Positions 30,867 to 50,740 of a stretch of 64,000 nucleotides of DNA are shown piece after piece; positions within the stretch are counted from its first letter, which is position 1; the number at the start of each line of letters is the position of its first letter. A program made the translations under genes and the position numbers. The notes beneath the pieces were generated by a model, which was not told the DNA's origin, did no database searches, and was given only the letters and a program-made list of their open reading frames with translations. The stretch spans positions 124,001 through 188,000 of the IMG/VR virus record IMGVR_UViG_3300042887_005053; one strand, written 5' to 3'.

Positions 30867-32237
30867 ATGACTAAAATATCAAATTATTCACAATTTATAA
30901 CAGAAGCATTTCTAAATAAAACACAAGAAAAAGCTATTGACACTATTCTACAATACCTTAAAAAGAAAATAGGTGTTGATTTTTATTCATATGAAGAAAT
31001 ATGGAACATTCAAAAAAGTGACGAGTTTCTTAAAGGTCAACTTTTTTTAACTCTATCATCAAATAAAGCAATTAGATTTAACTGGATCGAAAGAGACATA
31101 TCAAGTGAGATACATTCAATAGATCTATGGACTGATTTTGAATTTGATTCTAATCCTGACTTCACTTTACTATTAAATGAACTTTCGGTTGTTAAGGCTT
31201 TGCCTCATGTAGTAGACTTTTATAAAAATCCAGAAATAATAGTAAAAACAAGTAAGAAAGATGTAGTATTTGAAGATTTAGAAATCGAGGATACTGATCC
31301 AAGAAAAAGACTTGAAGATGAAAGAAAAAAACTATCAAGATTAAGAAGTCCTGAGAAAATTGAACTTCAGAAAAGAAAAATAGAAAGAATAGAAGCAATT
31401 GTTGCACAAACTGAAAACTCTTCTATTGAAAGTGAAAAAATAAATCAACTTGATGATGAAATGAAAATTGATGTTTTTAAATCAATCGAACTTTATACTA
31501 CTCAAGTTGCAAGAGGCAAGTCAAACTCATTGATTATATCTGGTGATTCGGGTGTTGGAAAGACCCAAACCGTGAAAGATACCTTAACTTCACTTGGTAT
31601 GAGAAAAGATGATGATTATTATTTTGCAACTGGTACTGCAACAACAGCTGGTTTATATGAATTACTATTTAAGAACCGAAACAAACTAATTGTATTTGAT
31701 GACTGTGATTCGGTATTAAAAGATCCAGAATCGGTCAATATATTAAAAGGAGCACTTGATACCTATGATGTTAGAGAAATATCTAAATTATCGAAAGGTA
31801 ATACTTTTGATTCATCTGGATTAAGTGATGAAGAAGTTGATGTCCAGTTTAGCGAGACTGGTAAGTTTCCAAATAAATTCGATTTTACTGGACAAGTAAT
31901 ATTTATATCGAACTTACCAGAAAATAAATTTGATAAAGCACTATTATCGAGAAGTTTACATGTTGATGTGCATTTAGATAGACAAGAATTATTCGAAAGA
32001 ATGAAGTCTATAATGACAAGAATATCTCCAGATGTAGATTTTGAGAAGAAACTGGAGGCATTAGAATATTTAACTTTTATATGTAACACTTATCCAACTA
32101 AGTTTGATCTTAATATCAGAACATTAATACATTCAATCAATTTGAGAGCTCATAATGAAGAAATGATTAAGATTGGTGACAAAGAAGAACAAGTTTGGAA
32201 AGTTTTAATTAAAAAATATTTGGTTAAGTCAAGATGA
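30867..32237 (+). CDS. AAA+ ATPase with targeting-like N-terminus
   Basis: Walker A GDSGVGKT, Walker B IVFDDCD, sensor-1 FISN, ALLSRS arginine finger. Starts MTKISNYSQFITEA and has a coiled-coil linker. Confidence 0.85.
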   Translation: MTKISNYSQFITEAFLNKTQEKAIDTILQYLKKKIGVDFYSYEEIWNIQKSDEFLKGQLFLTLSSNKAIRFNWIERDISSEIHSIDLWTDFEFDSNPDFTLLLNELSVVKALPHVVDFYKNPEIIVKTSKKDVVFEDLEIEDTDPRKRLEDERKKLSRLRSPEKIELQKRKIERIEAIVAQTENSSIESEKINQLDDEMKIDVFKSIELYTTQVARGKSNSLIISGDSGVGKTQTVKDTLTSLGMRKDDDYYFATGTATTAGLYELLFKNRNKLIVFDDCDSVLKDPESVNILKGALDTYDVREISKLSKGNTFDSSGLSDEEVDVQFSETGKFPNKFDFTGQVIFISNLPENKFDKALLSRSLHVDVHLDRQELFERMKSIMTRISPDVDFEKKLEALEYLTFICNTYPTKFDLNIRTLIHSINLRAHNEEMIKIGDKEEQVWKVLIKKYLVKSR

Positions 32238-32812
32238 AACATTTAGAACTATTTGAATCATTCACTCTTATTAGTGAGAATCTGAAATATCATGTTGATA
32301 ATAATATTCCGGTTTTAGAGAATGTGTTTAGACCACATTCAAAAGCTTTTTATGATTTGATAAAAGAAGCAAGAAATCTATTTGATGGTGGTAAAATTGG
32401 TGTATCAGAACATGATAAACATTTATTTGAAACAACCGATTTAGGTTACTTTGATATATTTGAGAATGAAGTAGTACCACTTGATTTACCGATTGAAGTT
32501 GTTGAGGAAGTAAATGAGGCTGAGTATCACGGAAAAGAAGTTGAATTAAATAAACCAATTAGAAGTTCTGGTCCTAAAAAATATAAAGTTTATGTCAGGA
32601 ATCCTAAAACTAAAAAAGTTATATGTGTTAATTTCGGGGATGTGAAAGGTGGACTAACTGCTAAAGTAAGTGATCCAGATGCTCGTAGAAGTTTTGCTGC
32701 TCGTCATCAATGTCACCTAAAGAAAGATAAGACAAAGCCTGGTTACTGGGCCTGTCGTGCGAATAGATACGCTAATTTGTGGGGTGGTAAAACATATCCC
32801 GGATACTGGTAA
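32234..32812 (+). CDS. Conserved T4-like phage protein (EAEYHG...NFG...SFAARHQC...YWAC domain)
   Basis: 192 aa starting MKHLELFESF. The C-terminal domain resembles a small protein common in cyanophage-like T4 relatives. ATGA overlap with the ATPase stop. Confidence 0.7.
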   Translation: MKHLELFESFTLISENLKYHVDNNIPVLENVFRPHSKAFYDLIKEARNLFDGGKIGVSEHDKHLFETTDLGYFDIFENEVVPLDLPIEVVEEVNEAEYHGKEVELNKPIRSSGPKKYKVYVRNPKTKKVICVNFGDVKGGLTAKVSDPDARRSFAARHQCHLKKDKTKPGYWACRANRYANLWGGKTYPGYW

Positions 32813-32826
32813 AAATATATAGAACT

Positions 32827-33735
32827 ATGAAATACTTAAATACCTACAAATTATTTGAATCAGAAGAAGTAGTAAGCAACGAAGAAGTTACTGAACTAAT
32901 TGAAGAGTGTAAAGACATTGTTGAGACATTCAATGAGTCAGAAGATACTTTTAAAGTAGCTAATTATGAAACGGGATTTGTTGCATATGACTCTTATTTG
33001 AAAAGAATAAGAAGTGGTGACTTTGACTCGAGACAGTCACATGAATCTGATATGGCTGCTATTAAATTTAATCTTGGTTTATCAAGTGATTTGAGTAACG
33101 GATATTTTAGAGATAACGAAGAAAGTGTTACTACAGAAAAAATAGACGGATTAATTGAACTATTGAGTAAATCGAAGATACTAGTTCAGAGATTGTCGAG
33201 ATATTGTACTACAATTTATTATAAAATGACAGGTAACTCAATTAGATTCATTTTAATATTCAAAAATCCAGATGAGGGTAGTAGTAAGGCAGCAAAAGTT
33301 ACAAGATTATATAACAAGCTATCAAAAGATTTTAAAGATTATGACATGTGGAAAACTATGAATTTGGTTCAACTTAATCAAAGATCAAATGATAGAATTC
33401 CAGAAAAATATAGAGAGTTATATAGTTTACTTAAAACTAATCCTAATCTAATTGATGGTAGATATGGTCAATGGGATGAAACAAGAAGAAGTAATTTACA
33501 GTTAAGATTTTCTTGTTCTGAAACATTTGATGGTAATACAATTATTGTTAATGTCACTGGATTCAAATACAAAACATATATGATGGATAGATTCAAATCA
33601 ATTAGATTATCTAATGAAGAGAAAGTAGAAGCAATGAAATGCATCGAACAGAAAGTTAAAAATAGTTTAAGAAGTGATGCCGATTCAATTGAAACTTCAA
33701 TTGAAGGAAATCAGATAAAAATTAAGGTGAAATAA
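32827..33735 (+). CDS. Hypothetical protein with targeting-like N-terminus
   Basis: 302 aa starting MKYLNTYKLFES. AAATATATA at 32813-32821. Confidence 0.75.
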   Translation: MKYLNTYKLFESEEVVSNEEVTELIEECKDIVETFNESEDTFKVANYETGFVAYDSYLKRIRSGDFDSRQSHESDMAAIKFNLGLSSDLSNGYFRDNEESVTTEKIDGLIELLSKSKILVQRLSRYCTTIYYKMTGNSIRFILIFKNPDEGSSKAAKVTRLYNKLSKDFKDYDMWKTMNLVQLNQRSNDRIPEKYRELYSLLKTNPNLIDGRYGQWDETRRSNLQLRFSCSETFDGNTIIVNVTGFKYKTYMMDRFKSIRLSNEEKVEAMKCIEQKVKNSLRSDADSIETSIEGNQIKIKVK

Positions 33736-33974
33736 TGAAATACTTAAAGAAGTTTGAAGGATTTTCTAACAGAACTTGTGATAGATGTGGCGAGCGAACT
33801 AATACAATGAGTATGTCCTGGTTAAACACAGATGAGTGTTGTATGAATTGTTTAGAAATTGAAAAAGGAGAACCAGATTATATTTTGGCTAAAGAAATAG
33901 AATCCGAAGAAGTTAGAAAAGGTAATCTAAACTATAAAGGTATAAGAAATGAAGATAAACTGACACCGAGATAG
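33735..33974 (+). CDS. Small Zn-finger protein (CxxC...CCxxC)
   Basis: 79 aa, MKYLKKFEGF then CDRC...SMSWLNTDECCMNC...GNLNYKGI. TAATG coupling with the upstream gene. Confidence 0.7.
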   Translation: MKYLKKFEGFSNRTCDRCGERTNTMSMSWLNTDECCMNCLEIEKGEPDYILAKEIESEEVRKGNLNYKGIRNEDKLTPR

Positions 33975-34002
33975 AGAAGACTATATTATTAATATATAAT
34001 TT

Positions 34003-35124
34003 ATGAATTTAGAAATAATTTATAAAAAAATATGTCAAAGAGGTCAAATAAGAGTATTAGATAGATCCATCTATACAGAAAAACATCATATTATTCCGAG
34101 ATGTATGGGAGGTAACAACAATAAGGAAAATATAACTAAATTAACCGCTAAAGAACATTTTATCTGCCATAAAATTCTATGTAAAATTTATCCATCCAAC
34201 GAAAAGTTAAGATATGCCTTTTGGGCAATGTGTAATCAAAAAGTAAATAGAGATTATGTGGTTTCTAGTAGAGATTATGAATATGCTAAAACAATTTGTT
34301 TAGAAATGTGGAGAAGACCAAAATCCCCCGAATCCATAAAAAAAGGAGCAGATAAAAAAAGAGGCATAAAGGTAAATTATTTTATTTACCCAAAACGGAT
34401 ACAAGATGGTAATTCTAATCACAATCACGGTAAAAAGTGGATAACTAATATTTTAACAAGTGAATCAAAAATGATATTTGGTGATATTCCAGATGGATGG
34501 AAAATAGGAAGATCAAAAGTTGGCAGTTTGTGCAAACCAAATTCAAAAGGTAGAAATTGGTATCATAATCCAGAAACAAATGAAGAAAAATACTTCAATT
34601 TTTCCGATAATCCACCAGGATGGATTAAGGGTAGATCTAAAAATAAAAAAATTGGAGGAGATAATCTCTCCGGTAAGATTTGTTATTTCAACAAATCACT
34701 AAATAAAGAGAAATATTTTAAAGATGATGATATAATACCAGATGGGTGGATCAAGGGTAAGTTAAAAAAAAGAATTTGGTTTTATAATCTTGAATTAAAT
34801 ATGGAAAAATTATTCACTGAAGATTCCGCAGATGTTGGTTTTATTCGAGGTAGATTACCTAAATTACCATTTAGTGAAGAAATGAAAGAAACAAATGAAT
34901 TTATAAGAATTTTTAAAAGAGACATAGATGAAAAATCACTTGTTTGGCATAGAGATAGAGAAGATAGAATTATTGAGTCGATTGGTGAAACTGATTGGAT
35001 GATACAATTAGATAATGAACTGCCAAAGTCGTTAAATCAAAAAGTGTTCATTCCAAAAGGAGTTTATCATAGAGTTATAAAAGGAACTAATAATTTGAAA
35101 ATAAAATTAATTAAATTAGTTTAA
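34003..35124 (+). mobile_element. HNH homing endonuclease fused in frame to a C-terminal cupin-like phage protein
   Basis: EKHHIIPRCMGG...NITKLTAKEHFICHKIL HNH motif, four W(x)N...(P/V)xGWxxG(R/K)-type DNA-binding repeats, then LPFSEE...LVWHRDREDR...FIPKGVYHRVIKG cupin-like domain. Own TAATATATA at 33990. Confidence 0.8.
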
Positions 35125-35727: not shown

Positions 35728-36288
35728 ATGGAAATTAAGAAATTTATTCGTCAAGAAAAAACTACAAATGTAGAAAAACCACAAACAAGTGGAACAGTAA
35801 TCACTCCTTCAAAGTTGACTGAAGAAACCATTTCAATTTTGACTGAAAGAATAAAAGATGAGTATACTGCTCACTATTTCTATAGATCAGCTGCTAACTG
35901 GTGTCGTAACATGAACTATAAAAAAGCATCACAATTCTTTGATAATGAATCAAGTTCAGAATTAGAACATGCTAAAGGATTACAAGAGTATATGGATGAC
36001 TTTAATGTTCAACCACATATTCTACAAACAGAAACAAACTTTGAGTTTGATTCATTAGTTGATATTATAAATGGTGCATATCAAATGGAACATTCGTTGA
36101 TGAATTCATATAATCAAAGTTCATCAGCATTATTTACTACTGACTTAACTACATTTGATTTCTTAGCTAATTATAGAACAATTCAAAAAGAAGCTGTAAT
36201 TGAGTATTCTGATTTATTGAATGCATTAATGTTAGTAAATCATACTGATAAGTTTCAGGTTCTTTATTTTGAACAAACATATTTTTAA
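35728..36288 (+). CDS. ftn: Phage-encoded non-heme ferritin (FtnA-like)
   Basis: 186 aa. By-eye alignment with E. coli FtnA: DEYTAHYFY..AANWC, ASQFF..E..SELEHA, AYQMEH, DLTTFDFLANY..IQKE, LYF. Ferroxidase residues equivalent to E17/Y24/E50/H53/E94/Q127 are present. Confidence 0.85.
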   Translation: MEIKKFIRQEKTTNVEKPQTSGTVITPSKLTEETISILTERIKDEYTAHYFYRSAANWCRNMNYKKASQFFDNESSSELEHAKGLQEYMDDFNVQPHILQTETNFEFDSLVDIINGAYQMEHSLMNSYNQSSSALFTTDLTTFDFLANYRTIQKEAVIEYSDLLNALMLVNHTDKFQVLYFEQTYF

Positions 36289-36292
36289 TACA

Positions 36293-36553
36293 GTGAAATA
36301 CTTAAAGAAATTTGAAGCATATACATTCGAGGACTTTACTCTCAGTGATATTGAAGATGTTAAAGATTTGTTAGAATATGGTTTGCCTATTGAACAAATT
36401 GCGATAGAATTAGACTTTACGGTCGATAAAGTGAAACAAATAGTTCACTCTATTGAAAAGAATAAAAAAACGACTACAAAAGGATGTGGTTGTTGTTCAG
36501 ATTGTACCGGTGAAGTGGATTGTGAATGTGGTTGTGTTGAGTGTGAATGCTAA
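36293..36553 (+). CDS. HTH-like domain plus metallothionein-like Cys-rich tail
   Basis: GTG start gives MKYLKKFEAY. LPIEQIAIELDFTVDKVKQIV looks like an HTH. The last 22 aa contain 9 Cys (CGCCSDCTGEVDCECGCVECEC). Confidence 0.7.
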   Translation: MKYLKKFEAYTFEDFTLSDIEDVKDLLEYGLPIEQIAIELDFTVDKVKQIVHSIEKNKKTTTKGCGCCSDCTGEVDCECGCVECEC

Positions 36554-36589
36554 AAATTAGTTACTATAAACTATAAATAAAATTATTAT

Positions 36590-36961
36590 ATGGAAAAATT
36601 AATGACATTCGAATCTTTCTCTGATGAAATAGATTATGAAAACTACTACTATTTAGTAGAAGATATATTACTACTTGAAGAAGTAACAGCTGGGTCAGTT
36701 GATACTGCTGGGTCAAAAGCATCAAAGATGATAAAAAAGAAATCAGAACAAAGTGGTATTCCTGTTGGAATTCTTAAAAAGGTTTATAAGCGAGGGCAAG
36801 CTGCTTGGAATGCTGGTCATCGTCCAGGTACACCACAACAAGCTTGGGCTACTGGTAGGGTAAATAGTTTTATAACTGGTGCTGGTGGAGCTAGAAAAGC
36901 TGACAATGACTTATGGGCAAAAGCTAAAGCTGCTAAAGCTAGAAAAAAGAAGAAAAAATAA
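36590..36961 (+). CDS. Conserved T4-like phage protein (DUF5824-like)
   Basis: 123 aa starting MEKLMTFESF. KKSEQSGIPVGILKKVYKRGQAAWNAGHRPGTPQQAWATGRVNSFI resembles a conserved cyanophage-type family. Confidence 0.65.
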   Translation: MEKLMTFESFSDEIDYENYYYLVEDILLLEEVTAGSVDTAGSKASKMIKKKSEQSGIPVGILKKVYKRGQAAWNAGHRPGTPQQAWATGRVNSFITGAGGARKADNDLWAKAKAAKARKKKKK

Positions 36962-37425
36962 TGAAATACTTAAAAAGATTTAATGAAAATTTAGATAATA
37001 ATTCTTATAAAATTCATATACCCGAAAAATATTCAGGGGTTAGAATGGAATTTGGGGAATTTGCCTCACCACAAGACATAATTGATACGTACAATCAGAT
37101 AGTAGAAGAAGGAGTTCCTTTGGTAAGTTATTCCGAGGATGGGTTCTTCACTAATGAAGATGATGAAGAAATTGAAGAGTTTATAATTCTTGATGAATTG
37201 AATTATGCTATTGTTGGTGAAGAAGAAGATAATATGGGAGATTTACCAAAACAAAAAAGATTTGGTGATGGTAATGAAAATGAAATCTATTTAACCAATA
37301 ATGTAAGATTCCACCGTAAAGGGAATGAGTTAACTTTAAGTTACACCCCAACTAAAATTGGAGGGGGACTTAGAATATCTGATGAACAGAAGAATATGTT
37401 AATTGATTTTTTAACCAAGAATTAA
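36961..37425 (+). CDS. Hypothetical protein with targeting motif, possibly frameshift-truncated (extension to 37510)
   Basis: 154 aa starting MKYLKRFNEN. A +1 frame continues protein-like sequence to a TAA at 37508-37510 that abuts the terminator. Confidence 0.65.
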   Translation: MKYLKRFNENLDNNSYKIHIPEKYSGVRMEFGEFASPQDIIDTYNQIVEEGVPLVSYSEDGFFTNEDDEEIEEFIILDELNYAIVGEEEDNMGDLPKQKRFGDGNENEIYLTNNVRFHRKGNELTLSYTPTKIGGGLRISDEQKNMLIDFLTKN

Positions 37426-39566: not shown

Positions 39567-41129
39567 ATGACGAATTCCGATTTAAACAAAGACACTAGAT
39601 GGATAGAAAAAAACTATCCATCTTTTTTTTGTGATATTAGTAACTACACTAGTATAGATATTCCTTGGAAAGAAAAATATTTTTGGAGTGTTAATGGAAT
39701 CAAGGATAAACCTAAATGTACAATCTGTGATAATGAACTAAAATTTTTGTCTATAAAAAAGGGTTATACTAAATTCTGTTCTAGAAAATGCACGGCCATT
39801 GGCACTATCGATAAGAAAAAAAATACTTGTATTCAAAAATATGGTGTTGATAATCCAATGAAATCCGAGATGATAAAGGATAAGTTTGATAAACTAATAA
39901 CTGAAAAGTATGGTGTATCAAACATCTCAAAATTATTAGACACAAAGGATAAAAAGAAAAATACTATGTTGTTGAATTATGGTGTTGAGTATAATTCACA
40001 AAGAGATGAGGTTAAGAGTTTACTTTCAGAAAAAATGGTTCAAAAGTCAAGTGAAATGAACTATAAAAGATCACTTCAAATATTTGAAAATCTTAATAAA
40101 AAAATAGAAATGTTTGATATTAAATTAGTATCAGTCAAATCATCTAATTATCAGTTTGAATGTTTTAATTGTGGTGAAGTTTTTGCCATACATAAAAACA
40201 CTCTTAATGATAGAATACGAAATCAAAACACAATTTGTACAATATGTAATAAAATTGACAACACATCTAATTCACAGGAGATAATTTTGGATTTTATTAA
40301 ATCGATTTATAACGGTCCTATAAAATCAAATGATAGACATTTAGGATTTGAGTTAGATATATATTTACCAGAGTTAAAAATAGCATTTGAATATAACGGT
40401 GTGTACTGGCATTCAGATGAATTCAAAGATAAAAAATATCATTTTAACAAGACTAAAATGTGTAGTGAGAATGGTATAAAACTAATTCATATTTGGGAAG
40501 ATTTCTTCATATCAAAGAGAAATATAGTTTTGTCAAGAATATCTAATCTTCTTGGAAACAGTAAAAGAGTTCACGGAAGAAATTGTAAAGTTTCATTTAT
40601 TAGTAATGACGAGTATGTAAAGTTTATAGAAGAAAACCATCTACAGGGTTATGTAGTATCAAAATACAGAATAGGAATTTATTACAATAATGATTTATAC
40701 GGTGTTATGTCTTTTGGTGGTCTTAGAAAAGCACTCGGTCAAAAAAGTGAGAGTGGAACTTATGAGTTATTGAGGTTTTGTAACAAAAATGGATATACTA
40801 TTGTTGGTGGAGCATCTAAGATGTTGAATTTTTTTATTAAGAATATTTGTCCAAATAAAATAATTAGTTATGCTGATAAATCTTGGTCATCCGGTAGTAT
40901 TTATTATAGGTTAGGTTTTAGATTTGATTCTGAGACTGCTCCTAATTATTATTACATAAAAAATGGAGTTAGATACAACAGATTTTCCTTTAGAAAAGAT
41001 ATTTTAGTTAGAAATGGAGAAAACAGTTCTTTGTCTGAGTCTGAGATTATGAGAAAGAATAAATATTACAAAATATATGACTCTGGTAATTACAAATTTA
41101 TTTGGGAAAATAAAAATCCAATCATTTGA
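39567..41129 (+). mobile_element. Free-standing Hef-like homing endonuclease
   Basis: 520 aa. CxxC...CSxKC knuckle, KYGV repeats, CxxC..CxxC, ELDIYLPELKIAFEYNGVYWHS PD-(D/E)XK-like core, then NHLQG...YELLRFC...DSG C-terminal domain. Paralog of 49043..50740. Confidence 0.75.
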
Positions 41130-49042: not shown

Positions 49043-50740
49043 TCAACTTTGGTAATTTAGTACCCATTTTTTATTACCACCATTATAAATTTTAGGGAAG
49101 TTAAGTTCACTCATTATTTCTTCTTCTGTTTTATCTGGATCGAATCCCATTTTAACAAGTTTTTGTTTTCTCCAGTTGTATCTGTGACTTCTAATTCCAT
49201 TAATCAAATACCAATATCCCGGTTTTGAAGTATGTTTATATTTGAATCCCAATTTTTGATACAGGTCTCCTGTTGATATTAGATTGTCAGAGTATGTTTC
49301 AATAGTAATTGGATTGTTTTTATTGATGAAGTAATTAATTAGTTTTGAAGCACCTCCAATTATATTGGTGTATCTCTTGTTACAAAATCTAGTAAGTTCC
49401 CAGAAATCCTTTTTGTTGACTCCGCCAAGTGGTACTCTTAGTCTTGAGAAAGTCATTAGACTAATTAATTCATTTTGATAAAATAATCCAATTCTAACTG
49501 ATGACTTACAATCACCTTGTAAATGATTCTCATCTAAGAAATTTTTGGAATCATTGTAACTTACTTCTTTAATGATTGTTTTTCTTGCTCCTATACTATT
49601 AGACTTTTTTATTTTGTGTAGAATGAATGATTTGCACAAATCTCTCTTAGTAACCCAATCATCCTCCCAGATTGTGTAAAGTTTGATTTTGTTCTCCTCA
49701 GATAGTTGACTTTTCTTCAAATGATAATTAATCTCCTTAAATTTATCAGAATGCCAGAAAACACCATTGAATTCAAATCCTATTTTTAATTCCGGTAAAT
49801 ATATGTCTATTTCAAAAGGTTTTATAGTTTGTTTACAGTTTTCTATGATTTCACCATTATAATTTTCCTTTATGAAGTTATAAAGTTCGATTTGCCCAAT
49901 TGAAGAACTTTGAGATATAGGAAAACAATTCGTGCAAATTGGCGTAGAGTTATTTATTCGAAAATAAAATTGATAAGGAAGTATGTCAAATTTTTTAAGA
50001 CATTTTTTACAGTAGAAAATAAGATTTGTCGATATTTTCTTTTCAAAAGAAACAAATTCGTAATCAGATGATAAAGCATTTGATATTCTTTCTTTGTAAT
50101 TCTTATAGAAGTGTTCAATTGTTTTATCATGAATATTTTTGTTCATCCAAGGATGTTCAACTCCGTATTTTTCGATTGATGTATTCTTATATGACTCTTT
50201 GAAAGACTGAATGTTCAATTTGAAAGACTTGACTCTTTTATCTAGAATTTCTTTAGATTTTGATGGGTTATCAACTTTCCAATTTTTATGTAATGTTGTT
50301 TTTGATTTATCTTTAATTTCACTAGATGACATAGGTGAGTTACCACCATATTTTTTATTATTAGTTTCTTTGATTTTATTTTTTATTATGTCAGATTTAC
50401 TGGGACTAGTAGTTCCATATTTTTCTAATGATTTACTTTTCTTTAATTCAATTATGGATGGATCTGACGACATACACTTATTTGAGCAATACTTTAAAAA
50501 TCCAATATTTGAATTTTTATATTTTACCTTTTTATCACACGCAGGATGCTGACATTTTGGTATCTCTACTAAACTATTTAAACACAGATAAACTTTTTCC
50601 TTAAATGGTAATTCAACAATATTATATTTAGAGCAGTATTCAATAATGTATTCATACTCTTCTGGATAATTTTTAGACAAAAAAGATTCTTTTGAAAATC
50701 TACCAGATGGATCCGAGTCTGTGAATATTTCTAAATTCAT
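49043..50740 (-). mobile_element. Free-standing Hef-like homing endonuclease
   Basis: 565 aa, same architecture as 39567..41129 (KYG repeats, EIDIYLPELKIGFEFNGVFWHS, ENHLQG, WELTRFC). Own late motif at 50761-50769 downstream of the sheath terminator. Confidence 0.75.

What the first reader, a model, noticed from the sequence alone, without database searches (positions are those of the whole stretch)
36293..36553. HTH domain fused to a metallothionein-like tail
Seen: after the targeting motif, LPIEQIAIELDFTVDKVKQIV (HTH-like), a Lys/Thr linker, then CGCCSDCTGEVDCECGCVECEC-stop. Inference: this could be a metal-responsive DNA-binding protein. I know of no named phage family with this architecture.
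Basis: partly seen in the sequence, partly recalled or inferred. Interest (0 to 1): 0.6.

Follow-up and report, generated by a model that had tools for sequence, protein, structure and literature searches.

The report
Phage HTH protein with nine-cysteine module
A small protein of a giant freshwater phage joins a DNA-binding-type three-helix domain to a 22-residue, nine-cysteine tail that proves to be a conserved, movable, phage-only mini-domain in no family database, and that probably holds metal ions.

Summary
Window 36293-36553 (+) is an intact 86-codon gene with an 8-residue start signature, a three-helix HTH, a short Lys/Thr linker and a tail with 9 Cys in 22 residues. No other 22-codon stretch in any frame of the 204 kb record has more than 6 Cys.

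The HTH call is supported. AlphaFold2 gives three helices at pLDDT about 90. The listed fold matches are almost all HTH domains (Z 6-7). Pfam hits to HTH_7 and sigma-70 region 4 recur but stay below threshold. A family profile reaches tandem HTH_23/HTH_7 proteins at E 1e-13 to 1e-14.

The tail is not a lineage oddity. It has fixed spacing C-x-C-C-x2-C-x5-C-x-C-x-C-x2-C-x-C and recurs in 15 distinct versions. It sits in at least five protein architectures of related phages. A variant follows the same HTH in a clade only 42-48% identical, which includes the 642 kb phage LR756502.1. It matches no Pfam family, and a DNA-pattern scan found it in no cellular genome.

Metal binding and DNA binding are inferred, not shown. 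The HTH is acidic, and the ferritin-like neighbour is not a conserved partner. I rate it a new variant of a known kind, of moderate interest.

The parts
36293..36553 (+). Whole gene, 86 codons plus stop, GTG start
   Evidence: Translation. ATG at this position in L014, X7 and X16. Homologues start here.
36293..36316 (+). Start signature MKYLKKFE (residues 1-8), shared by 13 other ORFs of the record
   Evidence: Genome scan. Synonymous codon variation among the copies points to conservation at the peptide level. There are 20 matches in LR756502.1 against 0 for the reversed control. pLDDT is below 50 in both models.
36338..36466 (+). Three-helix HTH module (residues 16-58; helices 17-29, 33-39 and 44-60)
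   Evidence: AlphaFold2 pLDDT 87-91. Nearly all listed VIA-align and Foldseek matches are HTH domains. Sub-threshold Pfam hits to HTH_7 and Sigma70_r4 appear in 22-26 of 30 members. The family profile reaches tandem HTH_23/HTH_7 proteins.
36467..36484 (+). Basic Lys/Thr linker (residues 59-64), the most variable part between strains
   Evidence: Strain differences cluster here, for example T61S and K63Q. Relatives have an acidic linker at this position.
36485..36550 (+). Nine-cysteine module (residues 65-86), spacing C-x-C-C-x2-C-x5-C-x-C-x-C-x2-C-x-C; the protein ends on the ninth Cys
   Evidence: Unique in the record. All Cys are kept in four strains, with only V75M and synonymous changes. 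The same spacing occurs in 15 distinct modules from other architectures. It aligns with the variant of the LR756502-like clade. No Pfam or PDB sequence match. pLDDT about 40 without metal.
36590..36961 (+). Next gene, DUF5824 domain. In relatives it is fused downstream of the HTH, or of HTH plus cysteine module.
   Evidence: Pfam DUF5824, E 3e-14. HTH-DUF5824 fusions occur in 26 clusters. P0206 and P0207 are HTH plus module plus DUF5824.
36961..37425 (+). Following gene (acidic 'KIHIP' module), fused to the HTH module in other relatives
35728..36288 (+). Ferritin-like gene ending 4 bases before the target's start. It is a neighbour, not a conserved partner.
   Evidence: Pfam Ferritin, E 3e-17. 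More than 1000 homologue clusters. Relatives have the ferritin gene without the target gene (L024). Others have the HTH gene without the ferritin gene (X10 joint).
32234..32812 (+). phrog_7595-type gene of the same locus. Its homologues in relatives carry the cysteine module upstream of this domain.

Best explanation
The gene encodes a small acidic phage protein built from portable pieces. The first is an 8-residue start signature common to many genes of this phage. The second is a three-helix HTH of the resolvase / homeodomain-like / sigma region 4 type. The third is a 22-residue module with nine cysteines.

The module is a conserved mini-domain that these phages attach to several different proteins. 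It most likely folds only around metal ions, as a zinc- or copper-thiolate cluster. Nine Cys could hold three divalent ions, as in the beta-domain of metallothionein. It would then form a compact metal-dependent knob at the end of the HTH.

The HTH and a cysteine module have stayed together in two clades whose HTH modules are only 42-48% identical. They therefore probably act together. My reading is that the cluster is a structural, pairing or partner-binding unit, and that the HTH needs it to bind its target, which may be DNA or a protein. The protein would be metal-dependent, not necessarily metal-sensing.

Shown: the gene, the predicted HTH fold, the module's conservation and mobility, and its absence from the cellular genomes scanned. 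Inferred: metal binding, the target of the HTH, and the coupling between the two parts.
For: - **Gene:** intact, with a confirmed start.
- **HTH fold:** AlphaFold2 gives three helices at pLDDT about 90. The best structural matches are the small-terminase HTH, LuxR-type domains and sigma region 4, at Z 6-7.3 (Foldseek).
- **HTH sequence signal:** hits to Sigma70_r4 (best E 6.5e-5) and HTH_7 (1.6e-4) in 22-26 of 30 members. The profile finds proteins with tandem HTH_23/HTH_7 domains at E 1e-13 to 1e-14.
- **Module is not chance:** it is the only 9-Cys stretch in the record.
- **Module conservation:** in 15 distinct copies G3, G10 and E11 never vary, while the positions between the Cys take 3-8 different residues. 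All 18 viral contigs fished with the first half of the module also carry the second-half Cys pattern; none of the 4 chance hits in cellular genomes does.
- **Architectures:** HTH+module; HTH+module+DUF5824; leader+module+DUF5824; leader+module+phrog_7595 domain; two modules in tandem.
- **Second clade:** the same HTH is followed by a variant nine-Cys module; six Cys and two Gly are invariant across both clades.
- **Charge:** helix 3 plus the linker are net positive and the rest is negative, a polarised distribution.
- **Fold of the tail:** it stays unfolded in metal-free prediction, as expected for a fold that depends on metal.
Against: - Nothing here measures metal binding.
- The module has no detectable sequence relation to any metallothionein or zinc-finger family.
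- The HTH module is acidic in all members, and all its Pfam matches are below the curated cut-offs.
- Most family members (about 70 of 72 clusters in the first search) have no cysteine at all, so the HTH works without the module.
- The module also works with non-HTH partners, so coupling between the two may be loose.
- Structural Z scores of 6-7 are in the range the tool itself calls common.
Confidence: 0.45

Rival explanations
1. It is a true metal-sensing repressor, working like CopY. The HTH binds an operator, and exchange or loading of metal on the C-terminal cysteines changes its DNA affinity.
For: The layout is HTH followed by a cysteine cluster at the extreme C-end. HTH and cluster are kept together in two distant clades. 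Helix 3 and the linker are net positive. CopY-type regulation by Zn and Cu through C-terminal cysteines is documented (PMC5646241, found).
Against: There is no match to the CopY/BlaI, MerR or ArsR families. The domain is acidic. No dimerisation region is evident. The module also sits on non-HTH proteins, and most HTH members lack it. No metal-handling gene is a conserved neighbour.
Confidence: 0.15
2. It is a metal buffer or store. The tail acts as a metallothionein that sequesters Zn, Cu or Cd during infection, working alongside the ferritin-like gene immediately upstream.
For: Cys makes up 9 of 22 residues, with C-x-C and C-C motifs. The ferritin-like gene ends 4 bases before the start codon and has a ferritin Pfam match. 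Both genes are present together in all four strains.
Against: The ferritin gene occurs without this gene, and the HTH gene occurs without the ferritin gene, in relatives. One 22-residue module per protein is a small store. The module is always a part of larger proteins, which suggests it serves them.
Confidence: 0.12
3. The HTH-like module binds a protein, not DNA, for example RNA polymerase or another phage protein. The cysteine module is a structural knob. The acidic surface acts as a decoy or adaptor.
For: Every member has a strongly acidic module. The most conserved stretch is an acidic-aromatic segment before helix 1, not the recognition helix. The closest folds include many sigma region 4 domains that work through protein contacts. 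The module is fused to different partners in relatives.
Against: No partner was identified. The one complex prediction tried gave no answer. The profile's relatives with clear Pfam domains are ordinary basic HTH repeats.
Confidence: 0.15
4. It is a virion-packaged protein. The shared start signature would act like the T4 capsid targeting sequence, and the cysteines would form disulfides or a metal cluster that stabilises the protein in the particle until ejection.
For: 14 ORFs of the record, this gene included, match the start-signature pattern; one of them is a doubtful 50-codon ORF. They are otherwise unrelated. Seven lie in tandem inside the structural gene region, among tail fibre, tail tube, virion protein and terminase genes. 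T4 internal proteins are diverse proteins that share only a short targeting sequence (PMC3012670). A Glu is fixed at position 8 or 9, and T4-type prohead proteases cut after Glu (own knowledge).
Against: No prohead protease was found in the partial record, and that search had no working control. The signature usually lacks the Leu/Ile-x-Glu context of T4 cleavage sites. There are no proteomic data. Nine is an odd number for disulfides.
Confidence: 0.1
5. The tail is a leftover without function, created when a stop codon split an older HTH-module-DUF5824 fusion gene.
For: Three-part fusions exist in the same clade (P0206, P0207). In L002 the sequence after the stop still resembles the DUF5824 linker and then decays.
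Against: The module is complete, with all nine Cys, and ends exactly on the last one. It is unchanged across strains and lakes, while the linker next to it varies. The same module is conserved in many other proteins.
Confidence: 0.03

Closest known systems
CopY-type copper-responsive repressors (BlaI/MecI-like winged helix with a C-terminal C-x-C-x4-C-x-C motif)
   Same: A small protein with an N-terminal HTH-type domain and a cysteine cluster at the extreme C-end. Metal occupancy of the cysteines controls DNA binding in CopY (PMC5646241).
   Different: There is no sequence match to that family. This protein has nine Cys with different spacing, not four. It has an acidic domain and no evident dimerisation helix. 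Its module is shared with non-HTH proteins.
Metallothionein beta-domain (nine Cys binding three divalent ions) and bacterial SmtA/BmtA
   Same: Nine Cys in about 22-30 residues with C-x-C and C-C motifs and no aromatic residues inside the module. No fold is predicted without metal.
   Different: No profile or sequence match. The module is rich in Asp and Glu. It is used as a part of larger proteins, not as a free protein. It has fixed Gly and Glu positions.
Simple three-helix HTH domains: Pfam HTH_7 (resolvase), HTH_23, Sigma70_r4, GerE/LuxR
   Same: The predicted fold and the sequence pattern of helices 1-3 agree. The best structural and profile matches are to these families.
   Different: All single-protein scores are below the curated cut-offs. 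The net charge is strongly negative. A conserved acidic-aromatic segment precedes helix 1.
T4 internal proteins with a capsid targeting sequence
   Same: Many otherwise unrelated small proteins of one phage share only a short N-terminal signature that begins Met-Lys and has an aromatic residue at position 7 (PMC3012670).
   Different: Packaging and cleavage are untested here. The signature differs from the T4 sequence and can lie inside longer proteins.
DnaJ-type C-x-x-C-x-G-x-G zinc-finger motif
   Same: The centre of the module reads C-x-x-C-[T/N]-G-E, with the Gly invariant.
   Different: There is only one such unit, flanked by C-x-C-C and C-x-C-x-C runs. There is no sequence match to DnaJ_CXXCXGXG.

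Membership tests
Pfam HTH_7 / Sigma70_r4 / HTH_23 (simple three-helix HTH) | Profile score at or above the curated gathering cut-off | tested here: not met
   HTH_7 scores 16.5 bits against a cut-off of 23.8. Sigma70_r4 scores 12.5 against 24.1. Sub-threshold hits recur in 22-26 of 30 relatives.
Pfam HTH_7 / Sigma70_r4 / HTH_23 (simple three-helix HTH) | Three-helix bundle with helix-turn-helix geometry | tested here: met
   AlphaFold2 gives helices 17-29, 33-39 and 44-60 at pLDDT about 90. The top structural matches are HTH domains, Z 6-7.3 with rmsd 1.3-2.9 over 46-55 residues.
Pfam HTH_7 / Sigma70_r4 / HTH_23 (simple three-helix HTH) | DNA binding through the third helix | not testable with these tools
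   Helix 3 is net +3, but the module is net -7.
Metallothioneins (as a class) | Very high Cys content with C-x-C / C-C / C-x-x-C motifs and no aromatic residues | tested here: met
   9 of the last 22 residues are Cys, and the module has no aromatic residue.
Metallothioneins (as a class) | Match to a named metallothionein sequence family | tested here: not met
   No Pfam family at E up to 10 and no PDB chain at E up to 10.
Metallothioneins (as a class) | Metal-thiolate cluster formation | not testable with these tools
   Only indirect evidence is available: invariant Cys and Gly with free positions between them, and no fold without metal.
CopY / BlaI-MecI repressors | Penicillinase_R-type winged helix domain | tested here: not met
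   The family is not among the Pfam matches listed for the protein (E up to 0.1). It is also absent from the 25 commonest families shown for its 30 relatives (E up to 1).
CopY / BlaI-MecI repressors | C-terminal C-x-C-x4-C-x-C motif | tested here: not met
   The spacing here is C-x-C-C-x2-C-x5-C-x-C-x-C-x2-C-x-C.
T4-type internal proteins (capsid targeting sequence) | Short shared N-terminal sequence on otherwise unrelated proteins | tested here: met
   14 ORFs of the record match the signature pattern, this gene included. The copies show synonymous codon variation.
T4-type internal proteins (capsid targeting sequence) | Packaging into the head and removal of the signal by the prohead protease | not testable with these tools
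   The protease family was not found in the 35%-complete record, and the control genomes gave no signal.
RiPP precursor peptides (leader plus Cys-rich core) | A maturation enzyme encoded nearby (radical SAM) | tested here: not met
   No Radical_SAM match in the 204 kb record, with controls positive. Other maturase types were not searched. The 'leader' is a folded HTH that is also fused to other domains.

The most novel reading that the evidence does not exclude
The nine-cysteine module is a previously undescribed, phage-restricted metal-cluster mini-domain. Giant freshwater phages would shuffle it among small proteins that they package or make early. In this protein, loading or loss of Zn or Cu on the module would switch the HTH on or off. 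That would give the phage a direct read-out of the host's metal or redox state at the moment of infection.
Probability: 0.12. Interest if true: 0.7.

Novelty: new variant of a known kind. Interest (0 to 1): 0.5.

Why it matters
Cysteine-cluster tails on HTH proteins are a known way to couple metals to gene control, and metallothionein-like peptides are known metal stores. The new element here is a short module of fixed spacing that matches no Pfam family or solved structure. It was found here only in relatives of very large freshwater phages. It is moved between at least five protein contexts within one hypervariable locus.

If it binds metal, it would be one of the smallest self-contained metal-cluster domains. 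It would also point to metal handling as a recurring need of these phages, which carry ferritin-like genes as well. The module is easy to test: 22 residues, with many natural variants for comparison.

The case also carries a practical lesson. The module's conservation was invisible to a length-limited homology search.

Tried and rejected
- **Near-identity DNA search** in the phage collection: no match.
- **Best PDB sequence match, 8vd6:** a de novo designed repeat protein, so not evidence of kinship.
- **Protein atlas look-alike search:** no usable hit.
- **First conclusion, later withdrawn:** I first concluded that the tail is confined to one phage species. This rested on the word search, where 71 of 72 clusters lacked the tail, and on a strict tail DNA pattern. 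It was an artefact of the word search's length window. Longer kin found through LR756502.1 and the full profile search overturned it.
- **Ferritin as functional partner:** rejected as a conserved association.
- **RiPP idea:** no radical SAM gene in the record.
- **T4 late-promoter motif TATAAATA:** 22 matches against 13.6 expected, mostly inside genes. One lies 11 bases before the DUF5824 gene. Not informative. The sigma-70 and terminator scans were at background level.
- **Prohead protease search:** nothing found, but the control did not respond, so it is uninformative.
- **Complex prediction** of the HTH module with the neighbouring DUF5824 domain: no answer, neither for nor against.
- **Second AlphaFold2 run** with tail-bearing homologues in the alignment: the tail still did not fold.
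- **Pattern scan of 185,579 cellular genomes:** only four chance matches in high-GC DNA, none with the second half of the module.
- **Expression:** no RNA run holds the gene, so expression is untested.
- It was redone from the stored files.

Full report
**1. What is in the sequence**

It starts with GTG, four bases after the stop of a ferritin-like gene.

The start is secure:
- Near-identical strains carry ATG at the same position (L014; lake runs X7 and X16).
- All homologues begin with the same residues.

The tail has 9 Cys in the last 22 residues. Among all stop-free 22-codon stretches in the six frames of the 204 kb record, this is the only one with 9 Cys; the next best has 6, in non-coding frames.

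**2. Where the window comes from**

- The window is bases 124001-188000 of a 204 kb IMG/VR virus record. CheckV estimates it at 35% complete, and GC is 30%.
- Around the gene lie tail fibre, tail spike-like, tail tube, virion structural and large terminase genes, a gp47/SbcD-type nuclease and several homing endonucleases.
- By the nuclease, the closest named records are uncultured phages of 635-642 kb, LR756502.1 and LR745206.1, at about 50% identity.
- The same DNA is held by lake and freshwater metagenomes of 15 studies.

**3. The HTH module**

- Two AlphaFold2 runs give three helices (17-29, 33-39, 44-60) at pLDDT 87-91. The first ten residues and the tail stay below 50.
- All top Foldseek rows are HTH domains (NarL, serine recombinase, VpsT, IstA), but with E 0.12 or worse.
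- An independent all-against-representatives alignment puts a phage small-terminase HTH, a LuxR-type domain and many sigma region 4 domains on top. Z is 6-7.3 with rmsd 1.3-2.9 over 46-55 residues. The tool warns that such Z values are common, so this is consistent support, not proof.
- At sequence level the protein scores below the cut-off for HTH_7 (E 0.009). Of 30 relatives scanned singly, 26 hit Sigma70_r4_2, 24 hit Sigma70_r4 (best E 6.5e-5) and 22 hit HTH_7 (best E 1.6e-4).
- A profile of the family, searched against 1.84 billion representatives, reaches proteins made of tandem repeats at E 1e-13 to 1e-14. Those repeats score far above the cut-offs for HTH_23 and HTH_7.

I conclude that residues 16-60 are a genuine simple HTH. 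One caution remains. The module is net -7 here and -5 to -12 in all 71 relatives measured, and only helix 3 and the linker are positive. DNA binding is therefore plausible but not assured.

**4. The family is modular**

The first word search found 72 clusters that share only the first 60 residues or so. One search sorted them by sequence motifs, and a few fusions escaped the motifs. Their forms are:
- free-standing or unclassed, mostly about 60 residues: 27 clusters;
- fused to DUF5824, which is the next gene in the window: 26 clusters;
- fused to an acidic module that is the gene after that: 18 clusters;
- one near-identical copy carrying the Cys tail.

Gene order around the family is conserved, while fusions and splits differ.

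**5. The tail: first impression and correction**

In that first set no other member had any cysteine. A strict back-translated tail pattern found only two more strains of the same phage. Within these strains all nine Cys are kept. The tail shows one V-to-M change and three synonymous changes, while the linker beside it varies. Four further lake metagenomes list no difference in the tail.

This looked like a species-level novelty. It is not: the word search sees only proteins up to 1.75 times the query length.

- The weak tblastn hit in LR756502.1 is a 157-residue protein. It has the same HTH (46% identical), an acidic linker, a nine-Cys cluster and a second Cys-rich part.
- Searching with it found eight clusters with that architecture.
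- Aligned with the window's protein, six Cys and two Gly of the cluster are invariant across both clades.
- The full profile search then found carriers in the window's own clade. P0206 and P0207 have HTH, module and DUF5824 in one chain. P0227 has HTH, module and another end. P0273 has two modules and no HTH.

**6. The module is a mobile mini-domain**

- A DNA pattern for only the first half of the module found 18 viral contigs. All carry the second-half Cys pattern too.
- The carriers are proteins of 311-343 residues whose C-terminal domain (phrog_7595) is the homologue of window gene 32234-32812. Other carriers are proteins of about 130 residues and leader-module-DUF5824 proteins.
- Among 15 distinct copies, the three positions not fixed by my search expression (Gly 3, Gly 10, Glu 11) never vary. 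The positions between the cysteines take 3 to 8 different residues. That is the signature of a structure held by its cysteines.
- The module matches no Pfam family and no PDB chain, and its carriers have no Pfam family.
- The same pattern found only four chance matches in 185,579 cellular genomes, none with the second half.
- The window's copy is complete and ends exactly on the ninth Cys.
- In strain L002 the DNA after the stop still resembles the linker before DUF5824 and then decays. The window's gene is therefore best read as a three-part fusion that was split after the module.

**7. How it most likely works**

- **Shown:** an intact, widespread gene; an HTH fold by prediction; a conserved nine-Cys module found here only in phage DNA; and pairing of HTH and module in two clades 42-48% identical.
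- **Inferred:** the module folds around metal. Nine Cys could hold three divalent ions, as in a metallothionein beta-domain, or a Cu(I) cluster. The module would serve the HTH as a structural, pairing or partner-binding unit.

I give this reading 0.45. A dedicated CopY-like sensor is possible (0.15). It is weakened by the module's use on non-HTH proteins and by the many HTH members without it. A storage role alongside the ferritin neighbour is weakened because that neighbourhood is not conserved. The remaining rivals are a protein-binding acidic HTH, a packaged protein marked by the start signature, and a functionless remnant. They are scored in their own sections.

**8. Comparison with what is known, and novelty**

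The closest analogues are CopY-type repressors, by layout, and metallothionein beta-domains, by cysteine count and motifs. Membership in either fails the sequence tests that could be run here.

The HTH belongs by fold to the simple three-helix class but falls below every curated cut-off. No Pfam or PHROG family covers the HTH module, the cysteine module or their combination. I rate it a new variant of a known kind: a metal-type cysteine cluster appended to an HTH, built from an undescribed mobile module.

**9. Limits**

- No experiment or metal-aware prediction was possible.
- Expression is untested, because no RNA run holds the gene.
- The record is a fragment.
- The complex prediction gave no answer.

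Noticed in passing
window 32234, 32827, 33735, 35135, 36293, 36590 and 36961 (gene starts); further copies elsewhere in the 204 kb record: 14 ORFs of the record, the target included (one is a doubtful 50-codon ORF), begin with the signature Met-Lys-[Tyr/His]-[Leu/Ile]-Lys-x-Phe-[Glu/Asn]. Seven genes with this or a close variant lie in tandem here. Codons differ at synonymous sites, so the peptide is what is conserved. LR756502.1 has 20 matches to the back-translated pattern against 0 for the reversed control. The pattern resembles the T4 capsid targeting sequence, but that role is untested.
   Followed up: partly
window 35728-36288: A ferritin-like gene with an E-x-x-H motif of ferritin type (read by eye). 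It has more than 1000 homologue clusters in metagenomes, on phage-like contigs with varied neighbours. Ferritin-like genes seem common in this phage group.
   Followed up: partly
window 34003-35124; also 39567-41129 and 49043-50740 (-): Homing endonuclease genes. The first is largely absent from strain L014, where window 33961-34945 is missing, so it is a recent mobile insertion. The other two are paralogues of phrog_3339 type that interrupt the structural region.
   Followed up: partly
window 36590-36961 and 36961-37425; P0216: The DUF5824 gene and the following acidic gene are separate here. In relatives they are fused to the HTH module in every combination, including one 237-residue chain with all three. 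DUF5824 always carries an acidic N-terminal extension of some kind before its basic domain.
   Followed up: partly
window 33735-33974: A 79-residue protein with the start signature followed by a C-x-x-C ... C-C-x-x-C zinc-ribbon-like motif (phrog_27033). This is another small cysteine-bearing protein in the same locus.
   Followed up: no
L019 3578-3736 (OGPV01000002.1, 178 kb contig, 24% GC): A free-standing 52-residue peptide made almost only of Cys, Glu, Asp and Asn, found by the tail pattern. It lies next to a large protein of over 1000 residues. It is unrelated in context to the phage module.
   Followed up: no
P0214, P0218, P0221: Proteins made of 4 to 11 tandem copies of an HTH unit that the family profile recognises. 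This is a natural repeat architecture. It resembles the designed repeat protein 8vd6, which topped the PDB sequence search.
   Followed up: partly
L002 406-472: In one strain the DUF5824 gene downstream of the Cys tail has decayed to a short remnant, and a different gene sits on the opposite strand. This shows rapid turnover at the locus.
   Followed up: partly
window 36572-36579: A perfect T4-type late promoter motif lies 11 bases before the DUF5824 start. The motif is not clearly enriched or well placed elsewhere in the window.
   Followed up: partly
L029 2351-2794 and L031 2428-2871: In the LR756502-like clade, a SET-domain protein that begins with the same start signature lies two genes upstream of the HTH-cysteine gene.
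   Followed up: no
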